In this document: in pieces, positions 40,300 through 50,307 of the stretch
Layout of the letters: each line of letters begins with the position of its first letter
Position numbering within the stretch: the first letter of the stretch is position 1
Assembly: GCA_900088475.1 (NCBI GenBank)
Contig: FLMG01003947.1
Location: 151,151-215,150, forward strand
DNA from: Hyphochytrium catenoides
Lineage: Eukaryota > Protista > Hyphochytriomycota
Direction: 5' to 3'
Length of the DNA: 64,000 bases
Made by a program: the position numbers and the translations under genes
The notes under the pieces: model-generated
The model's input: the letters and a program-made list of their open reading frames with translations, nothing else
Told to the model about the DNA's origin: nothing
The model's database searches: none

Positions 40300-43200
40300 T
40301 TAACGTCGGAGATCTTTCAGATGCATAAATCCTAGATAGATGTTGCCCACTTGGTCGTGCCCTTCTGGACCATACAGGGGATATTCGTTAACATCATCTC
40401 GCCGATGTTCAAGATACGTCGCTACCGCCTCTCCTGTGGCAACTGCCTCGTCACCCCTCAGCCTTCCTAGCTTCAAACCGAGGTCAACCTCCAACGATCC
40501 TATCTCGTGACTCTCCGGAAGCGGACTTGTTGGACGCTCGAGGTATTCTCGGCCTCTAAAATCATCTTCATTCTGCCACCATGGCTCATCCTCTTCTATT
40601 ATCCTCTGGCCCAGGCTTGGGAGTTCACGATGTGCTCGTTCATGAGTAATGGACTCCAGGGTATTCTCTTTTACGACCTGTGCAGAAAAGCCCCTCGTCT
40701 TTGTCTTTCCTAGGGGTGTAGCATGCACTCGGCTCACTGCCGCGGCAGCAGTGCGTTCTTCGAGATCTTCAGTCATCGTGGTGATGCCACTATCACTATG
40801 CTGGGCGACAATATCTTGTGTCGATTGGTAATATGTCCCGAGGAGCCTCTGAATTTATAGCAAAACAATTACGACGGTTGCAGAGGCGAATGCGTATGAG
40901 AGTCACGCACCTTCGAATGCAACCGCTTCTCGTCATATAGCTCAATGGCTATATCGGCTTCCGTAGACCGGATCTCAAAGGTGAAAAGTTCATTCCAAAC
41001 GAAGTCGTGGACACTTCGCACCTTCCTGGTGTGATAGTGTTCCACCACCTTAGCTGGGCCACCTTGAACAGGTTCTACGAGATAGATTCGTGCCCGCAAT
41101 GAGCATTTCTCCTCCGTAAGGAGTGTCGCCTTGGCGATAAAAACCTCAAGCTTTGTCACTACATCTGACTCGATCAAGGGCTTCAAAACCTTGTTGTCCC
41201 CTGAGAAGGAGCGAGGTGGGCGCCGTGGTGGCTTCCAAGAAAGGCTTGTCAATTTGGGGAAATTAGCAATAGAAGAATGGGGCCACTTGGTTTACCTCGT
41301 GGCGCTTATCATTCAAAAGCTGTAAAGAGTTTCCAATGGACTTGGCCAGTGTCCCGGTAGCTCCTAAAACTCCCACAACGGGACCAGCAGTTCCTGCTAG
41401 TACGCCTTTAGCGCTACCCTTGATGGCACCTGTAACGCCCTCCTGCTTCATGCCTTGTACAGGATACTGGACAGCTTTCTTGGCTCCATGTGCAATGGAT
41501 CTCGTGAGCAGCTGAATGACAGAAGAGTTATATCCCAGGCCATTAATCATAACCCCTCCGAGAAGGAGTGGCGTACCTTTCCTCCCTGAACAATGCCCTG
41601 TCCTATATGCTCAGGGGGTTCTTCTCTCTCTTTATTGTCAAAGAACGTGACAGCTTGTAACATGCCGGCTAATCCAGACGCTGCTTTGCCAACAGCCTTT
41701 GACGGCGCTCCAACAGCGGTATTTAGAAGTATTTTGGCGCCTTGACCTGGCGTTGTGCTAGACCCTCTGGCTTCGCGCCTCGATTTCCTGACGAATCTCT
41801 CGACCCCGGACTTCATCTAGAAGCACCACCGGAAGAAGTGACATGAACACTCTGTAGCCAGAACGTAGGTAGGTAACCAAGAGATCTCACGTACATCTCG
41901 ATACAGTCCGATAGGATCTCCTAGGAGTCCAAGCGACAGAATGATCTTGTACCACTGGTCGAGAACGTCGTAGGCATACTTCCAGCCGATATTCATTGCC
42001 AGCTCAGATGGCGTAAAGAACCTACTACGGTACTCAATCTTATCAAAACCAAGGGTAGGTGACAAAGTTCTAATGCCTTGAACCATATTGGCAATGGTCT
42101 CTGGTAGATACTGCTTTAGTGCTGCAAGAAGAACACGTTAGCACAACTCAACTGATAGTGGACTTGAAGCAGACATCTACCGTCTTCATTCACTTCCGCA
42201 TCAGAAAGAAACACCAAATCCAGCTGGAAGGCCTCTATGACCATCTTGTCCAGATAAATGACGGTCTTAGGGTTAGACGACACCTTTCCCACGCAAGGCT
42301 TGGCCTTGACAAGTTTCAAACATGCCTGTTGGCCTTCTAAGGTATAGGTCAACATCGACTTTCCGTACAAGAGAGCGGATACCAATCAATCTTACCTCTC
42401 GTTTGCTTACCCCTTGCGTTAGAGTCGGGAGTAATCTTCTTCATAATACTGAGCAGCTTTAGCCAATAATCCAGGTCGACCTTAAAGAGGATATCGCCAA
42501 GGGCTACTTGTGCTACCTCAACAGTGACCAAGGAGTCTATATCATCAAGAAGAGTCAGCAGCCATACTCCCTTCGGCGAGCTCTCGTCATAGAGAAGCGA
42601 CACCTACTCCGCACTGGCTCTCTATCAAGCTTAACGGTGAGAAATGGCACTTCTCCTGTCTCTGGTCTCCATTGTGCATTTGCATCACTGCGGAATCCAC
42701 TATCTTTAGGCGCAAAGATCAATGGCAGCTCACTGTCCGCGGTCATGTCATCTGGCGATAGAGGCGTGGAGGCAAGCTCAACAAGCGACCCAAGAAAAGA
42801 ATAAAGCTTGAGTTTACCTATTTCCACATGGTGGACGCTGATCAAATTTTCCCCTGTCTCTGGTGGAGATTGCAGCCGCAGACCCTCGATGTAAATGGTC
42901 AGATATTCGTGTGGAGTAGGATCAATAAGTGTCAACGTAATCCCCGGTAGGTTGATATCAACGTCGCCTTGTTGAAGCAGCCTACAGAGATCATTGAGGT
43001 TATTAGCGGATGGGACCCTAGAGCCAATGCAATTGAGTGGTAAAATCAACAAACCCTTTGCCTCTGCCTTCTAACTCTAAATGCGTCATGGGCAGACAAC
43101 GGAAGGCAATCACTCGTGTATTCTTATCCACAAAGACCTCAGGGTAGATTTTTGCCGCTTTCCCTGGGAACGAACATACAGGATTATTACAGCGCTAGAG

Positions 43201-46200
43201 ATAGGAATGGCTGTCACTCTCTCACCCTTTAGTTGAAGCGCTGACAAGCACTGTATCCTAGACGGGTTGACTCTCATGGGCTCTGTCCCGGGAAACGTAA
43301 ACTCGATCTGCAAGTCATTGTCACTCTTAGCGCCAACCGCTTCCCACGCGAATGAGGCGTATTGGTACTGCCCTAGTTGAACCTCAGACGCTTCTGGCAA
43401 GTCAGCTTGGCGGTATGTTAAGGGGTATCCAGTGCTGCAGCGGCAGGAAGTCAGCAAAGACCACATCTTACTTCAGTATTTCTGCCCGTACCGGTTTTGG
43501 ATCTGGAAGGGTGGTGTACCAGTAGTATCACGGACTATGATATGGATGGTTGCGCCTTCAGGAACAACCCGCAGGGAAAGGAGAGGTCCGCGGCCCATGA
43601 GGCCGTCACACCATATGTACCTTTCCTTTTCCTTCTCAATAGAAATCTGTTCAGACCACTTGGTCTCTTCTTGGCCTATCAAGTAAGCAAGAATTGAAAT
43701 TAGAAGTAGCAGCGATGGTACACAGACCATCGCATCTTACCTGAGACCCTCCGAAGCGAGAGAGCCTTCTCTCGGCCTGCCTCACCCTCAAAGTCATAGA
43801 GAATAGCATTTTTTTGCCTAGGTATGTCATAGAGTCGGCCTTTCGATTGTCCATGCCCCTCCCTATCCAGACCCGAAGTCGCGAGAATTTGGAGGTCCAG
43901 CTCTGTCTTGTTCTCAAAAATGAATCTCGGCTGCAATATTACGATCCTGGTCTTTGAGTATTGGGCCGGGGCTGCCTTCGTAGTGTAGCCAATGACCAAA
44001 CATCCTGGACAATCAATGGCACCAGAAGCCCCCACCCTGAGAATGATAGACAGGACCGCGAAAGTTAAATTACCTCCCAACAACCAACAGATCGAATTTT
44101 TTACGTACTTTGAGATATCAACACTGCTGGACCACGATGGATTGGTCTTCAGACTCATATCAGCTGACGCAAGCGGTTCATAGCATGAGAGCCAGATCTC
44201 TCGCGACCTGTGGCGCCATCTGTGATTTTCCGGTAGCAGTGAGAGGCTAGCTTGCTTCTGTGGAGCCATCATGAGTGGCACGAAATCCTGATCAAAGCTT
44301 CTGCCATTCTCGCTGTCACTACTATGAAAACCTCGTGTGCTATACTTCAGGAAAAGATTCGTCTTGTTCAAGATCCAGAATGGAGCTACGATCGTTAGTC
44401 GTGGAGGAGAGAAACTATTCCATGCGGGCTCGATGAACAGGTGTACGCCAGAGCCAAGCTTCAGTTTCGTTCTACTAAGGTCGAAGCTTCCCCGCTTGTT
44501 GGCTAGTGGTACCCATACGGTCCGGGACCACTCTGTAGCGACTATATCGTGCGTCGCCTCGGCAGCAACGTCGTGCTCTTTCAATAGACGTATGCGGAGA
44601 AAGGCATCTCTCTGCATATCTAAACCCGATACCTCTGCTTGAAATCCAGAAGAAATTACCCCAGCTCTCCCCTCCCCGTTCTCAGTCCGAAATAGCTCTT
44701 CAAGCATGTGCTTCTTACGGCCGTGAGACTTTCCTTTGTCTTTTTGAGGAGACGGCGCCAACATCTTCAAGTCCTCATTAGAGTCCCATAGAATTGGATA
44801 TTCCTCTGCCTCAAGTCCTTCGTTGGTAGCAGCCAAGTACAGTGTGGGCTCTGATGATCCGGGAGGGGGTTCATCGTTAAGTTGCACCACCCTATACTCG
44901 AGAGCTACTGGTAGATCATTTTCCAACACCAGCTGCGGTAGTAACGAAAGCTCGTAGTAATATACATCTCCGGAGCCAAGGCACTGACGGCGAGTCATAG
45001 TCAAAGCGTGGCCTCCCAATTTATGTCGGAGAGCAAACGTGATAGCACCATCCGGCGTGGCGTTCTTCTTGACTTTTCCCAGGAATGCATCAGCTTCTTC
45101 CTCCGTCCTCGTTTCAAGCTTCACAGGTAGACTCCAATGCTGCTCTCCTAGCCGCCTCACCGAGACGTAACCATGATCTACGAGGAAAAGTGGCACTACT
45201 GCTTCATCATTGTTACCCAGAAGCTTAGGACCTCCTTCCAATGGTACTTGTCCTTCGTTATACCAAAGTAATTCCAACTTGGAAGTGCTCTTGCTCCTCA
45301 CTATTAAGGAGGAAAGAACCTGTATCTTCAGGCTCTCATCTGGTGCTGCATGGGCTCTGACGGTAACGATCCTGACCAGGCCGTTTTCACCACAGTTTTG
45401 TACTTTGAATGCCTGTACACGAAGTTTGGTTATGTCAATGCCCCGCACAGGCTCGTGTCCATCAAACACGAGATCCATGGACGGCCTGTTATCCGAGCCA
45501 AAGACCATCATGAGATCCTCCAAAGTAAGCTCAGTCGCTTCTACAAGTTGAGCAGCGGATAGACACTCAAAGAGTTCCACTTCGAGATCCGCTCTGGACT
45601 TTTTAGTTCCTCTTTCTCGATCCTGCCTCCTCGCGAGTTTAAGCAAGAGCTGCCGCACTTGATAAGCCTGCAAAAAACCTCTCCCTTCATGATCTGCCTT
45701 GCGGTACGCACGTGACAGAACATGTCCATCAAATGTCCGCCTGTCGGTTGATTCTATGACAAATTGCTTTCCTTCTAGATGGGACAACTGGACCTCCAGA
45801 GCGGAAGAGGTTGCACGTCCTTCTCTTTCGCATAGCTTGGCGCCTCTAACCGTTAGCTTCATTGCGGTTCCACACCTGTTCTCGATTGTGAGCAGGTCGT
45901 CTTTTGTCACGTTGCCAACCATCTCCTTCAATTCCGCTTTCCTTGAAAGGAAGACCTTCTTCAACATCCTCAAATTGTCCAGGAAGGCCTCAGAACAGTT
46001 GAGGGCTAAGTACTGTTTAGATCGCACTAGCAGCTGCAAACAAGTGCCAGGCTCCTTCCAGACTCCCACACGGACTGCATAGAAAAAAGGTCAGCTTTGA
46101 AGTTGCCGATGATGGTGTGCGTGCATTTCACGATTACCTTCATATGGCTCCAGAAAGGGCTCCATTGCCGTTACTGCGGAATTATAGTAGCCACCTGATA

Positions 46201-49200
46201 ACCTAAACGCACAGCTTGACACTAGAGAATCGTCTGGTGCGAAGGGCTTGCGTTCCTTGGCATTAGACTGCTTCCCCTCCCACTGCGTTAGCACCGCAGC
46301 TAGGTCTAAAACATTCAGTTCTACCCGAAGACGGGGCTGCCCACCTCGCCAAACGGCATGATCAAAAGACAAAATAAGGTCTCCAAGATTCGTGGACAGA
46401 CTTGTGCGGACTTTCATTGGCTGGACAAGTCTACGTTCTCTTGTTGTGGTCTTCGGCGGCCTCGGGGCCGGCTCCTGGCCAAGACCTTCGACTAACGATT
46501 TCGGTCCCGGTATACCGTCGACCTTGGAGTCCCTTGCAATTTGCCACGGAACTTTCTCCCTCTTGAGCGTTAGCCGAGGATATATAAGAGAATTCCAAGT
46601 TGTCTGGGCGAAGTCATAAGAGCGGAAGAGGCGAAGGAGCTTTTGTTGTACTATAAAGGGGTCCTGGCCATTCAAAGTCGTCGGCGAAGTACCACACTCT
46701 GTTAGGTACATCTCCCAAAAGCTTCCAAGCATTGAGGGAGCCTCGTCAGGTGAGTCCCCGGGCTCCTCTTCTGGCTGCGTTGTGATACCGTCGTGATAGC
46801 TAGGACTCACCGGCTGCCTTGTAGAGCCATCATACTTAGCTGTCAACTCTTTCGCGATAGCTGAGAAGGAGTCAGTTGGGCCTGGGTTCCAATCTCTCTC
46901 AGAAATGAGGGATTGATAGGTGAACATCGAGGGATCCCGAGGGACGCCAAATCCTCGTAGTGAAGCCGATGGAGGTAGCAAAGATGCAGCCTCCGTAAGT
47001 CTCATCGCCAGATCGCTATTATACACTTCGTCTTGATATTCGTCAGCCCTAAGGGTCAATGACCCGTAGTGGTGGAAGTACTTTGGATCGCGATTGGGAT
47101 CCAGACTCCGAAGAACCTCATCGCAGGTTAGGTTTGTATCTTTCATATCAACAATAGACGCCAATTTATCAACCATCACTGCAACCTCTGAGCGAGTCAT
47201 GGACCGATGTGAGAGGAACATGAGGAGGTCCGTTAGCTCTGCAAGACTTAGAAGGCCATCCTGATCCTTATCGGCAGCAAGGACGAGTTCCTGCAATCGC
47301 TCCAAGGGGTACGGGAGATCAACTTCCTTCCCGTTCGCCGCTGTCGGACGACTCGGTATAGCCTTCATGGCTGACTTTAGCTCCTTCACAGTCGCCATTG
47401 TGGTACCCGCCTCTTCCTTTCCAAACCTAACGGAGCAACTCTTGGCTCTAACAACAATCGTACGCTCTGCATGGCGCCCGGAAGCAGCTTGGCCATCCGT
47501 ACGGCAAACGAGTTCGACATCCGGTCCAGGTCCGGCCATTTCCAGAAGACCTTTGCCGGCGGCCCTTTGCACTTGAATAGCTTCATCGCTCAGAATAAGT
47601 CCGCAAGACGCTATCTTGATTCTGTCGCACTGCAACTTGATTTCTTCATGTTCCAAAGAGCTCTCAATGTCAAGGTAGAGATCAGCTGACCAAGCCAATG
47701 CGGGGCCCGAATAGTCACTGCGTTAATAGGAACAGAGGGAGTCAGTATAAGAACAGGAACCTCCGAAAGATTGGTGACTGACATACCTATACTCGGCTAG
47801 AGCAACTGCCTCTCCAGCCTCAACACAAAAATCAACCTTTATGGCCCTGATGCTTTGACGTTTCTTCAGAAAACTAGACATGATCACGGGGTTGTAGGTT
47901 GGGGCATTGCGCAAGTAGACGAGATGATCCTCTTTTTTTAGGAGATAAGCTGGTGGCTTTCGAAAATGAACACACTTAGTGGGCTTAGCCATATGATCCC
48001 AATACAGTTGCATCACCGTGGTCCAAGGTTCAAGGTTGCCGACCAAGATAAAGTCTTTCAGCTCAATAGACGCCTCAAGTGTATTGTCCCTCAATTTTCG
48101 ACCTTCCGTAGTGAACATATACTCGCACCTGGGGCTTCGATCTAGCAACAAACCCGAGCGGCTACACAGAGATATGTGAGTCGTAAAGTTCCTTTCCAAC
48201 TCTAGGGACTTGGAACTCACCTATCTCTTACTGAGATCCTTTTGAGCCTGATCTGGCCAGTGGCGCGATGCGTCTCTCGCTCGTTCACTTGGGAGCCAAA
48301 TGTTATGGCCGCTTTAACTTCCATGATAGACAACGTGATTAACGGTTCTGCAGGCTGGTCCATGACTCTTAGAGAGAGTCTTTTTAGCTCAAAACCGCCA
48401 TCAAAGCACTGGAACAATACCATGCCATGATCGCTGTCATCTTTCGAAGGGAAATAACTCCTGTTTTGGAGCGTAATGAGCTTTCAGGGAGTCATCGAGC
48501 AAACATGAAAGACAGAGCTCACCCCATTTCGCGATGGATAAGTGAATGCAGATCCGCTATAAGCGCCAACTTCTCGTCGACACCTGGAATCTTCTTCCCA
48601 CCAGATGGAATCTGATAGTCACTGATTGTAGTTCTCATCCAAAGTATATCGTCCACATCCATGCGGGCTTCGAGAACTCTAAGTTGCTTCTTCTGCTCTT
48701 TATTTGTCTGGTCTCCTGTATAACAGAAGCTAGGTAGCGGGGTTCAGCATAGTACCAAGCCTTCAAGGCGCACCCGCCCTTACCACTTGGCATAGTTATG
48801 AATATCGCTCTCCGTCAACACTGTGAGAGACAGTTCATCCACCGCTCGAGCACTGGCTTGCCAGCACTGGTAGATTTGATAATGGTCCCAGAGCGCCCAT
48901 AGGGAACGAACAATCAACGGGGTAATAGTTACAGATATCCCCTCAATGACCAATCGTGCCACTACTACTTTCTCCGAAGACGCTGCAAGATGTTGGGGCT
49001 CAATCAGACCCCCATACAGAGGCGGTGTCTTGATAGATGCTTTAGCTGAGACTGGTTCAAGAAGATAGGCACCTGCGGGATGAATGCTTGATGATTCTGA
49101 GGCGCTGATGTGAATGTTCTGTAGGTCGCAATGAGGGGTCAGAAAGAAAAGTGCTGAGAGCTCGAACGGTATTGTCACTCACATCGCTTTGCATCTGGAA

Positions 49201-50307
49201 TCGCGGATTCCTATGATGATTAGCAGTACGTTTAGGGTCGACGTATATCGCGAAGTTAATGACTTTCAGATCACGCATTACTGCCTGAGATGTTGCACAA
49301 ACCCTAGCTTAGTCAGGCTCGTCCAATAGAGAGCACACGGGGGTTACCTGGTTTGGCGCAGCAAGTGGCGGAGACGGGGCCAACATAAAATGCTCCAGAC
49401 CGACCACCACAGATGCCATCTGTGCTCCAAAGATCCTGAGATTTACGCAGGATACTTCAACAATGAAGTTGTGCATCAGTGTATTGAGGCGTTTCTTCCA
49501 CCATGGTAATGAATCGGTCTGCATGCTTTCCGCATTCTCTTTCTGGGGGCTGTGCGGATCAGTGCGCTCCTCCATATTTTGCTAGAACTTTTAGTCAGTC
49601 CGCGGTCTTTAACGAAAAGAGGGCAGTAAGTTGGGCTACCGGCAAACGCCAAGACTTACCAACTTCTCCATCTTTCGAGCTATTACTTGCCAGAGTTGAT
49701 GGGCTCTGGCAATCCTCTTCGACTGCACCTTATGCACATCATTGCGAAACCTATCACAGTTCTACCAATGATAGAATGTTGTAAGCAAGCAGTACTCAAG
49801 TGGCAAATGTGGACTCTCACCTCGGGCAGGTCTGGGTTCCAGTAGTGTGGGTCCTGTGAGACGAGGCCAATTTCAAGCCCAAGGAGCTTAAGGACGGTAC
49901 TTCCTCCCCACAAGACAGAGTATGGTATGTGGATAGACAGATGGTCAATGCGCATTGAGACTACTGAATAAGGCATGGGCATCAGTCGCGTCAGCCTGCC
50001 AAGGAGGATGTCTTCGAGGTACAGGTTTCTGATCACTACAGAAACAGCCTTCCAGCTCGATCGGACCTTAACGAACCCTTTAACATACCCTTCTGGACCA
50101 AAGCTGAAACACAAGATAAATAAGTTTCGTATTGAAAAGCGTGTGACCAGAGTATTAGAACTTTACTTACCTGACTAGCGCAGAGAGCATCAGTGCAAAT
50201 AAGATTAGAAGACCATGCATCACAAGCAGCAGAGCGATGGTAATCGCATCGAGGAAAGAATAAAGACCGCCACGCGCCAGCCGAAGCACACAAGTATTAA
50301 GAGTCAT
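40300..50307 (-). CDS. VPS13-like bridge-like lipid transfer protein (many exons) with N-terminal TM helix, chorein-N, EF-hands, VAB/SHR-BD repeats, ATG2_C-like helices and a C2 domain
   Basis: Chorein-like VVIRNLYLED...IDHLSIHIPYSVLWGGSTVLKLLGLEI; YYNSAVTAMEPFLEPY; LVLENDLPVALEY; APFWILNKTNLFLKY; TRIVILQPRFIFENKT; PPFQIQNR; YKIILSLGLLGDPIGL; PVQGMKQEGVTGAIKGSAKG...GPVVGVL; RRPPR; C2-like FVWNELFTFEI...IELYDE. Confidence 0.88.

What the first reader, a model, noticed from the sequence alone, without database searches (positions are those of the whole stretch)
40300..50307. VPS13-like lipid bridge with an N-terminal membrane anchor, EF-hands and a C2 domain in place of the PH domain
Seen: the first exon (ATG 50307, with an in-frame stop just upstream) encodes MTLNTCVLRLARGGLYSFLDAITIALLLVMHGLLILFALMLSALVS, a TM-length helix spliced directly onto the chorein-like domain. 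A canonical EF-hand loop DKDQDGLLSLAE lies at 47237-47272, with a second degenerate EF-like pair near 45530-45700. After the ATG2_C-like helices and RRPPR comes a C2-like domain (~40910-41150). Known: yeast and animal VPS13 are soluble, recruited through adaptors (FFAT-VAP, VAB ligands), and typically carry a C-terminal PH domain. N-terminal TM anchors are typical of BLTP1/BLTP2, and the TM + lipid transfer + C2 layout is that of extended synaptotagmins. Inference: a membrane-anchored, Ca2+-regulated bulk-lipid bridge combining these designs.
Basis: partly seen in the sequence, partly recalled or inferred. Interest (0 to 1): 0.72.

Follow-up and report, generated by a model that had tools for sequence, protein, structure and literature searches.

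The report
Membrane-anchored VPS13 with EF-hands and C2
This protist gene encodes a giant VPS13-type lipid-transfer bridge that, unlike the yeast and animal ones, starts with a predicted membrane anchor, has calmodulin-like calcium-binding modules built in and ends in a C2 domain. Water moulds, a diatom and a marine-metagenome protist have the same unrecognised design.

Summary
One gene of about 22 exons lies on the minus strand (50307-40300, about 2,891 aa). It is colinear with 2,800-3,000-aa oomycete proteins that databases call "hypothetical" or "EF-hand domain-containing".

- **Anchor:** exon 1 encodes one of only two equally hydrophobic 19-mers in the 64-kb window. It sits directly before a chorein-type N-terminus. 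All 25 orthologues checked have such a segment; 15 canonical VPS13s do not.
- **EF-hands:** the loop at 47272-47237 is canonical. The other three EF loops, canonical in oomycetes, have decayed here.
- **C-terminus:** it is a C2 fold with a roughly 100-aa insertion, at the position of the canonical PH domain.

- The anchor is predicted, not shown.
- Calcium control of this copy is uncertain.
- Green-algal VPS13Y (transmembrane segment plus C2 domains, Leterme 2023) is a published partial precedent.

The searched papers do not describe the EF-hand variant. The scan's first readers noted similar genes elsewhere in this genome (s1-338264, s1-371235).

Verdict: new variant of a known kind.

The parts
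40300..50307 (-). Whole coding region. Proposed model: 22 exons, 21 GT-AG introns of 54-78 nt, 8,676 nt, coding 2,891 aa plus the stop. Exons: 50307-50171, 50103-49821, 49761-49660, 49581-49348, 49284-49183, 49118-48784, 48729-48523, 48460-48221, 48161-47787, 47717-46132, 46074-43741, 43675-43492, 43434-43226, 43163-43076, 43017-42608, 42536-42396, 42336-42181, 42121-41895, 41816-41577, 41511-41296, 41231-40911, 40848-40300.
   Evidence: The model combines a splice-site and codon-usage dynamic programme with orthologue guidance. A profile of 25 orthologues maps colinearly, positions 37-2732 onto 50093-40923. tblastn hits are also colinear. There is no RNA support. The exon 3/4/5 junctions are the least certain.
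50171..50307 (-). Exon 1: start codon and the predicted N-terminal transmembrane helix. The hydrophobic run spans residues 15-45, about 50265-50173.
   Evidence: In-frame TGA upstream and a GTAAGT donor. Best 19-mer dG -2.94, Kyte-Doolittle mean 2.64. One of two such segments in the 64-kb window. An equivalent segment is present in all orthologues.
49821..50103 (-). Exon 2: chorein-type N-terminal region (first repeating-beta-groove unit).
   Evidence: It aligns with the orthologues' N-termini. That alignment matches a canonical VPS13 N-terminal profile at 94% hhalign probability, with canonical residue 5 equal to orthologue residue 25. Family HMM positions 37-95 map to 50093-49917.
47105..47311 (-). 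EF-hand pair 1. EF1 has the canonical loop DKDQDGLLSLAE (47272-47237). EF2 is degenerate: one residue is deleted and position 3 is Lys.
   Evidence: Pfam EF-hand_7 E 5.7e-4, 20.6 bits, below the cut-off of 30. Five EF1 loop positions (1, 3, 6, 8 and 12) are invariant across 26 sequences. The AF2 model shows helix-loop-helix twice, pLDDT 84-88. The profile matches calmodulin at E 1e-15.
46574..46744 (-). Conserved helical module downstream of EF pair 1 (FW..Y...G..sLnGq.p..VQ.K..R.F..Y.fAQ..W). Function unknown.
   Evidence: Many invariant columns. Three helices with pLDDT about 90.
45500..45730 (-). Relic EF-hand pair 2 (EF3 loop DHEGRGFLQAYQ at 45694-45659, plus EF4). Both have lost the calcium-binding consensus.
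   Evidence: Residue-level alignment with the orthologues' canonical EF3/EF4. No regex match for a canonical loop.
43491..45082 (-). VAB (VPS13 adaptor-binding) beta-sandwich repeats.
   Evidence: Pfam VPS13_VAB E 7.2e-15 (54.9 bits) and E 2.5e-6 (26.7 bits), both above the cut-off of 22.6. jackhmmer envelope.
41296..42121 (-). VPS13 C-terminal / ATG2_C-like helical region (exons 18-20).
   Evidence: Family HMM positions 2406-2632 map here with E 1e-16 to 1e-21. The orthologous stretch of P0003 aligns to canonical VPS13 at E 1e-23 to 1e-11, ending 110-130 aa before their C-termini.
40911..41231 (-). Exon 21: the RRPPR linker and the first six strands of the C2 domain.
   Evidence: Pfam C2 E 1.3e-3. 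30% identity to the orthologue C2.
40303..40848 (-). Exon 22: a C2 strand (RLLG..., 40848-40807), a roughly 100-aa insertion with a basic GKTKTRGFS motif, the last two C2 strands and the conserved ...LKDLRR end (40386-40303). The stop codon is at 40302-40300.
   Evidence: Alignment A3. The splice junction K|RLLG matches the orthologues' KKLLG. The AF2 model of the orthologue has pLDDT 80. Foldseek returns C2 domains and no PH domain among the 50 listed.

Best explanation
The locus is one gene for a divergent VPS13-family bridge-like lipid transfer protein. It belongs to a clade seen here in oomycetes (two paralogues each), a diatom, a marine-metagenome protist and this organism.

Proposed mechanism:
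- **Donor end:** a single N-terminal transmembrane helix sits directly before the chorein helix and ties the lipid-entry end permanently to the donor membrane. By analogy with BLTP1/2 this is most likely the ER, with a short lumenal N-terminus and a cytosolic body. This would replace the FFAT/VAP recruitment used by canonical VPS13.
- **Bridge:** the repeating-beta-groove rod carries lipids. It is probably shorter than the canonical rod.
- **Calcium modules:** two calmodulin-like EF-hand pairs are inserted in loops of the rod. This is a built-in version of the calmodulin that VPS13A/C/D bind as a separate protein. In oomycetes they would make bridge conformation or docking calcium-sensitive.
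- **Acceptor end:** VAB, the ATG2_C-type helices and a C2 domain engage the acceptor membrane. The C2 replaces the PH domain, and its loops are basic rather than acidic.

What is shown: domain content, order, conservation and colinearity. What is inferred: membrane insertion, topology, ER location, calcium response and the target of the C2. In this copy only EF1 keeps a calcium-binding loop, so calcium control may be weakened here.
For: - **VPS13 membership:** Pfam VAB above its cut-off. Chorein-type N-terminus at hhalign 94%. Family versus canonical VPS13 profile at 100% probability, E 7e-76.
- **One gene:** orthologue tblastn hits and the family HMM are colinear across 50093-40303. The model has no in-frame stop and its length matches the orthologues.
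- **Anchor:** dG -2.94 for exon 1. 25 of 25 orthologues score -4.5 to +1.8, against +5 to +12.5 for 15 canonical VPS13s. 14 of 16 members of the second paralogue have dG <= 0 and a 15th scores +0.87. A marine-metagenome relative also has the segment once its upstream ATG is used. A chance occurrence is unlikely.
- **EF-hands:** four canonical loops in the oomycete orthologues. The window's EF1 loop is canonical and aligns column for column. AF2 shows the EF fold. The profile matches calmodulin at E 1e-15.
- **C2:** orthologues pass the Pfam cut-off. AF2 plus Foldseek give C2 domains, with plant E-Syt1 C2A best. The domain sits at the canonical PH position.
- **Calmodulin in trans:** reported as a constitutive, calcium-responsive partner of canonical VPS13 (PMC13430412).
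Against:
- An internal Met30 could give a start without the extra hydrophobic stretch.
- Two Arg residues precede the helix here, which blurs the positive-inside prediction of topology.
- In the window itself, Pfam scores for EF-hand (20.6 against 30) and C2 (19.4 against 22) are below the cut-offs.
- Three of four EF loops are degenerate in this copy.
- Foldseek matches of the window's own EF model are weak (E 0.03-0.1).
- The C2 fold was modelled on an orthologue, not on the window's split domain.
- No dedicated transmembrane predictor was available.
Confidence: 0.7

Rival explanations
1. The N-terminal hydrophobic stretch is not a membrane-spanning anchor. It could be an unusually hydrophobic, lengthened chorein entry helix that dips into one leaflet or caps the groove, or a cleaved signal peptide.
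For: Canonical VPS13 begins with an amphipathic membrane-interacting helix at exactly this place (PMC7613979). In the window the hydrophobic run continues into the part that aligns with that helix. Some orthologues are borderline, with dG +0.5 to +1.8.
Against: The extension adds about 20 or more residues before canonical residue 5. Most family members have dG below 0 over 19 residues, whereas canonical helices score +5 to +12. A cleaved signal peptide would put a 2,900-aa cytosolic-type bridge into the ER lumen. The hydrophobic core is also longer than a typical signal-peptide core.
Confidence: 0.17
2. Exon 1 is not part of the main transcript. Translation starts at Met30 or at another start, which would give an ordinary soluble VPS13-like N-terminus.
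For: There are no RNA data. The family HMM only begins to align in exon 2. Met30 (MHGLLILFALM...) lies where the canonical N-terminal helix starts.
Against: - The splice signals are consensus and the intron is 67 nt, typical for this gene.
- An equally hydrophobic segment occurs at only one other place in 64 kb.
- Gene models of other, distantly related organisms, including intronless ones, all carry the extension.
Confidence: 0.1
3. In this organism the EF-hands are structural relics. The protein is a constitutive bridge that does not respond to calcium, or it relies on a separate calmodulin.
For: Only one of four loops keeps the consensus. The C2 lacks the acidic loop residues: the orthologues read sNPKV and HKRK where calcium-binding C2 domains have Asp (direct reading of alignment A3). 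First readers noted other EF-hand VPS13 genes in this genome that may carry the calcium-sensing role (unchecked).
Against: Five key positions of the EF1 loop (1, 3, 6, 8 and 12) are invariant across all 26 aligned sequences, which suggests selection on that site. A single functional EF-hand paired with a dead partner can still bind calcium in other EF-hand proteins (general knowledge).
Confidence: 0.35
4. The locus holds two or more separate genes, for example an EF-hand protein and a VAB/C2 protein, rather than one giant gene.
For: None beyond the lack of RNA data. Some database relatives are annotated as fragments.
Against: The colinear match spans the whole length of single 2,800-3,000-aa orthologues, several of them encoded by uninterrupted ORFs. 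Splicing in frame is possible throughout.
Confidence: 0.03

Closest known systems
VPS13Y of green algae (Leterme et al. 2023, PMC10683392)
   Same: A VPS13 paralogue with a predicted N-terminal transmembrane helix, a chorein domain, VAB, C2 domains and ATG2_C. Its authors also proposed an E-Syt-like tether role.
   Different: VPS13Y has two C2 domains between VAB and ATG2_C and keeps the C-terminal PH domain. The paper never mentions EF-hands. It is reported only in Viridiplantae. Sequence relatedness to this clade could not be tested because no VPS13Y sequence was available here.
Canonical VPS13A/C/D and fungal Vps13
   Same: Chorein N-terminus, beta-groove rod, VAB and the VPS13_C/ATG2_C region are all homologous. 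EF-hand proteins (calmodulin, Cdc31) are functional partners (PMC13430412).
   Different: The canonical proteins have no transmembrane segment, are recruited by FFAT/VAP and adaptors, end in a PH domain, and bind calmodulin as a separate protein near the N-terminus. Here the EF-hand pairs are part of the chain, inserted at about canonical positions 1773-1799 and 2021. The rod appears to lack part of the canonical middle.
BLTP1 (Csf1/Tweek) and BLTP2 (Hobbit/Fmp27)
   Same: Bridge-like lipid transfer proteins that begin with a transmembrane helix anchoring the entry end in the ER (PMC7613979).
   Different: They belong to different families and have no VAB. They also lack EF-hands and a C2 tail. 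The window's gene is clearly VPS13 by its VAB and C-terminal homology.
Extended synaptotagmins / plant SYT1 / tricalbins
   Same: Same logic of N-terminal membrane anchor, lipid-transfer module and C-terminal C2. The best structural match of the C2 is plant E-Syt1 C2A (7as6).
   Different: These are SMP-domain shuttles or tubes, not a beta-groove bridge. There is no homology outside the C2 fold.
Second oomycete paralogue (for example Pythium oligandrum Poli38472_004332, Phytophthora sojae PHYSODRAFT_341128)
   Same: Hydrophobic N-terminus, EF-hands, VAB and a C2 at the C-terminus.
   Different: It has two strong C2 matches and a different C-terminal end. It is a weaker match to the window (E 4e-4 against 2e-19).

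Membership tests
VPS13 family (bridge-like lipid transfer proteins) | VAB (adaptor-binding) repeat domain | tested here: met
   Pfam PF25036: E 7.2e-15 at 54.9 bits, and 26.7 bits, against a cut-off of 22.6.
VPS13 family (bridge-like lipid transfer proteins) | Chorein_N-type N-terminus | tested here: met
   Pfam VPS13_N gave only E 0.085 on one exon. The family N-terminal alignment, which includes the window's exons, matches a canonical VPS13 N-terminal profile at 94% (E 1e-7). The full profiles match over residues 26-546 against 5-595 at 97%.
VPS13 family (bridge-like lipid transfer proteins) | VPS13_C / ATG2_C region before the C-terminal domain | tested here: met
   The window's exons 18-20 match the family HMM at E 1e-16 to 1e-21. 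The orthologue region matches canonical VPS13 at E 1e-23. The Pfam models themselves did not match.
VPS13 family (bridge-like lipid transfer proteins) | C-terminal PH domain | tested here: not met
   The AF2 model of the orthologue's C-terminus matches C2 domains, with no PH domain among the 50 matches listed. VPS13X also lacks the PH domain, so it is not strictly defining (PMC7613979).
VPS13 family (bridge-like lipid transfer proteins) | Continuous hydrophobic beta-groove able to carry lipids | tested here: inconclusive
   AF2 of one exon shows long beta strands, pLDDT 65-84. No full-length model was built because the joined protein was not assembled. The number of repeating units was not determined.
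EF-hand | 12-residue calcium-binding loop (D-x-D-x-D-G-x-I-x-x-x-E) within a helix-loop-helix pair | tested here: met
   EF1 reads DKDQDGLLSLAE. AF2 shows paired helix-loop-helix. Pfam scores are below the cut-offs in the window (20.6 against 30) but 71-80 bits in the orthologues. EF2, EF3 and EF4 of the window fail the loop consensus.
C2 domain | Eight-stranded beta-sandwich of the C2 type | tested here: met
   Orthologue model pLDDT 80. Foldseek target-normalised TM-scores 0.77-0.81 to E-Syt1, NEDD4, dysferlin and otoferlin C2 domains. The window scores 19.4 bits against a cut-off of 22 on its first part only and aligns at 30% identity.
C2 domain | Acidic calcium-binding loops (calcium-dependent subclass only) | tested here: not met
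   Direct reading of alignment A3: sNPKV and HKRK replace the Asp-rich loops, and the third loop is replaced by a basic insertion. No structural superposition of ligand positions was done.
Single-pass membrane anchor | A hydrophobic segment of about 19 or more residues with predicted insertion free energy at or below about 0 | tested here: met
   dG -2.94 and Kyte-Doolittle mean 2.64. Actual insertion cannot be tested with these tools.
VPS13Y (green algae) | Tandem C2 domains between VAB and ATG2_C, plus a retained PH domain | tested here: not met
   Here a single C2 follows ATG2_C and there is no PH domain.
VPS13Y (green algae) | Shared ancestry by phylogeny | not testable with these tools
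   No VPS13Y sequence could be retrieved. None appeared among the hits.
BLTP1 / BLTP2 | Family-specific beta-groove domains without VAB | tested here: not met
   VAB is present and the full-length profile matches VPS13.

The most novel reading that the evidence does not exclude
Several stramenopile lineages (oomycetes, a diatom, this organism) carry a VPS13 clade that is permanently wired to its donor membrane by a transmembrane helix and is gated directly by calcium through calmodulin-like modules fused into the bridge. This would be a natural fusion equivalent to the VPS13-calmodulin complex just found in animals and fungi. Its C2 tail would select the acceptor membrane. Under this reading, calcium control is an ancient and general property of VPS13 bridges, and an experimentally tractable single-chain system would exist in Phytophthora and diatoms.
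Probability: 0.4. Interest if true: 0.75.

Novelty: new variant of a known kind. Interest (0 to 1): 0.6.

Why it matters
How bridge-like lipid transporters are attached to membranes and switched on is an open question. Canonical VPS13 is soluble, is recruited by adaptors and, according to a 2026 cryo-EM study, carries calmodulin as a separate calcium-responsive subunit. In this clade the anchor and the calcium sensor are part of the chain itself. That argues independently that EF-hand proteins and VPS13 work together. It also offers a simpler system for testing calcium gating. Finally, it shows that the transmembrane-plus-C2 design reported once in green algae (VPS13Y) also occurs in stramenopiles, including major plant and animal pathogens where these genes are annotated as hypothetical or mis-named.

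Tried and rejected
- **Word-index search with an exon:** The search for homologous proteins with the 543-aa exon found nothing, because of the tool's length window.
- **Pfam on short exons:** mostly blank.
- **First gene model:** the first ab initio model contained a spurious 60-nt intron inside the chorein exon, a 28-nt exon and a read-past of the true stop. A second run with orthologue bonuses over-extended exons into introns. I resolved both with the family HMM map and by reading the junctions directly.
- **Foldseek on the window's EF model:** the multi-domain model gave only weak EF-hand matches.
- **VAB tree:** it separates the EF-hand clade from canonical VPS13 but leaves its internal order unresolved, with long branches.
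- **Rejected readings:** separate genes; a PH domain at the C-terminus; membership of BLTP1/2; a plastid-targeting signal, since plastid-less oomycetes carry the same N-terminus.
- **Not done:** No whole-protein Pfam scan, fold or transmembrane prediction of the window's own product was run.
Full report
**The gene**

The region 50307-40300 on the minus strand is broken into many stop-free segments joined by short GT-AG introns. Earlier scan notes identify the genome as a stramenopile protist. I built a gene model in three steps: a splice-site and codon-usage dynamic programme, a second run with orthologue support, and a profile map of 25 orthologues onto all stop-free segments. I read the doubtful junctions directly.

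The resulting model has 22 exons and 21 introns of 54-78 nt. It has no in-frame stop and codes for 2,891 aa. The exon 3/4/5 junctions remain the least certain. The orthologue profile (2,871 positions) maps colinearly, positions 37-2732 onto 50093-40923. tblastn of single orthologues is likewise colinear down to 40303. The locus is therefore one gene.

All hold.
- The ATG is at 50307 and a TGA lies in frame three bases upstream. Exon 1 ends at 50171 before GTAAGT, and exon 2 begins at 50103. The peptide is exactly as quoted.
- The EF loop DKDQDGLLSLAE is at 47272-47237.
- The second EF-like pair is near 45694-45500.
- RRPPR opens the exon at 41231, and Pfam C2 matches 41150-40917.

After the intron at 40910-40849 comes another strand (RLLGTYYQSTQDIV), then an insertion of about 100 aa, and then the last two strands, which run to the stop codon.

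**VPS13 membership**

- Pfam VPS13_VAB passes its cut-off twice (54.9 and 26.7 bits against 22.6).
- An exhaustive phmmer search of 1.84 billion representatives with the 796-aa exon gave only 13 hits. The best has 27% identity and all the leading ones are 2,800-3,000 aa long.
- These hits are Saprolegnia, Aphanomyces, Albugo and Phytophthora-type proteins named "hypothetical" or "EF-hand domain-containing". Their Pfam content is two EF-hand pairs, VAB and a C-terminal C2.
- A search with the C-terminal third of one of them found about 45 oomycete clusters and a diatom (Thalassiosira). Canonical VPS13A/C/D followed at E 1e-27 and weaker.
- A full-length profile of the family matches a full-length profile of canonical VPS13 at 100% probability, E 7e-76.
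- The family N-terminus, with the window's exons 1 and 2 as rows, matches the canonical chorein N-terminus at 94%.
- The region before the C-terminal domain aligns with canonical VPS13 at E 1e-23 to 1e-11. That alignment stops 110-130 aa before the canonical C-terminus, which is where the PH domain lies.

**The anchor**

In the profile alignment, canonical residue 5 corresponds to orthologue residue 25. The family therefore has an N-terminal extension placed directly before the usual entry helix.

| Set | Lowest 19-mer dG |
|---|---|
| Window exon 1 | -2.94 |
| 25 family members (all 25) | -4.5 to +1.8 |
| 15 canonical VPS13s | +5 to +12.5 |

A second oomycete paralogue family shows the same feature: 14 of 16 members have dG at or below 0 and a 15th scores +0.87. 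A marine-metagenome relative (P0011) appeared to lack the segment. It turned out to have an in-frame upstream ATG that adds MGLLWWILYLCVGAVSCWAVGVD.

Within the 64-kb window only one other place, a simple repeat, is as hydrophobic in any frame.

Three things remain unshown:
- That the segment spans a membrane.
- Which membrane it spans.
- Its topology.

In the oomycete proteins no charge precedes the helix and basic residues follow it, which fits a lumenal N-terminus and a cytosolic body. In the window two Arg residues precede the helix, so the prediction is less clear.

**The EF-hands**

The oomycete orthologues have four canonical loops in two pairs. In the window EF1 is canonical, and five of its loop positions (1, 3, 6, 8 and 12) are invariant across all 26 aligned sequences. 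EF2 has lost a residue and has Lys at position 3. EF3 and EF4 have lost most ligand positions.

AlphaFold2 of the window's own 528-aa exon, run with the orthologue alignment, gives two helix-loop-helix units at residues 136-204 with pLDDT 84-88. It also shows a well-predicted helical module at 325-381 and long beta strands at 434-527, although the mean pLDDT is only 60.6. Foldseek matches to calcineurin B, calmodulin and troponin C are weak (E 0.03-0.1, probability 0.98-1.0). The sequence profile hits calmodulin at E 1e-15.

Relative to canonical VPS13, both pairs are insertions, at about positions 1773-1799 and 2021 of a fungal Vps13. The second lies just before VAB.

**The C2 domain**

An AlphaFold2 model of an orthologue's last 240 residues (pLDDT 80) is a beta-sandwich interrupted by a partly helical, partly disordered insertion. 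All 50 listed Foldseek matches are C2 domains or C2-type membrane-binding domains, and 201 matches reach E <= 0.001. Plant E-Syt1 C2A is the best, followed by NEDD4, dysferlin and otoferlin. No PH domain appears among them. The sequence profile also finds NEDD4L and synaptotagmin-7 C2.

The window's two exons align with this domain at 30% identity. The splice junction K|RLLG matches KKLLG, and the ends match as ...LKDLRR against ...NDMRR.

Reading the alignment directly, the loops that bind calcium in classical C2 domains are basic or neutral here. The insertion carries a conserved basic motif (RKRVRGS, and GKTKTRGFS in the window). I therefore expect calcium-independent binding of acidic lipids. 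This is inference.

**Relatives and novelty**

A tree of the VAB region separates the window, P0011, the second paralogue, the diatom and the oomycete family from canonical VPS13 (support 94/95). The order inside the group is unresolved and the branches are long.

Levine 2022 (PMC7613979) states that transmembrane helices occur in Hobbit and Tweek but not in VPS13. Leterme 2023 (PMC10683392) describes green-algal VPS13Y as TM-Chorein-VAB-C2-C2-ATG2_C-PH and suggests an E-Syt-like tether. That paper has no mention of EF-hands or of stramenopiles. Searches for VPS13 together with oomycete, EF-hand, transmembrane or stramenopile terms found no description of this clade.

A 2026 cryo-EM paper shows calmodulin as a constitutive, calcium-responsive partner near the N-terminal end of VPS13C, VPS13A and fungal Vps13 (PMC13430412). 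That makes the built-in EF-hand pairs here a natural counterpart.

First readers of this scan noted a similar TM/EF/C2 VPS13 and a VPS13 with two canonical EF pairs on other pieces of this genome (s1-338264, s1-371235). They also noted two other unusual VPS13 genes (s1-360153, s1-364995). I did not test any of these.

**Verdict**

It is a new variant of a known kind. The gene is a VPS13 and a partial precedent exists (VPS13Y), but the combination of anchor, fused EF-hand pairs and a C2 in the PH position is undescribed in the searched literature. That combination is conserved across oomycetes and is present in at least one diatom.

The mechanism remains inferred in four respects:
- The ER anchor.
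- Calcium gating.
- The C2 docking to an acidic acceptor membrane.
- Calcium sensing by this copy in particular, which looks reduced.

Noticed in passing
P0013, P0099-P0131 (public proteins, e.g. Pythium oligandrum Poli38472_004332, Phytophthora sojae PHYSODRAFT_341128): Oomycetes carry a second paralogous family with the same logic: a hydrophobic N-terminus, EF-hands, VAB and two strong C2 domains at the C-terminus. Pythium oligandrum has both paralogues.
   Followed up: partly
Public records listed: Several family members carry misleading database names: 'Peroxisomal membrane signal receptor PTS1', 'Choline/ethanolaminephosphotransferase 1', 'Dynein assembly factor 1', 'Leucine-rich repeat domain' and 'Calmodulin'. 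At least some (P0036, P0059, P0064) also carry unrelated Pfam domains, so they look like fused gene models.
   Followed up: no
L001:305-373 and L002:243-311 (marine metagenome contigs, Tara Oceans project PRJEB4352): The called start of P0011 is an internal GTG. An in-frame ATG 23 codons upstream adds a hydrophobic segment like that of the rest of the clade.
   Followed up: yes
window 46574-46744 (-): A strongly conserved three-helix module after EF pair 1 (pLDDT about 90, many invariant residues) has no Pfam match. It may be a degenerate EF-like partner or a docking site for the EF pair.
   Followed up: no
window 40650-40700 (-), within the C2 insertion: A basic motif (GKTKTRGFS here, RKRVRGS in oomycetes) is conserved inside the insertion that replaces the third C2 loop. 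It is a candidate site for binding acidic lipids.
   Followed up: no
window about 5018 (+): A CT-rich simple repeat translates to FFLCLCLCLCLFLSLSVCL. It is the only other segment in the window as hydrophobic as exon 1, and is probably non-coding low-complexity DNA.
   Followed up: no
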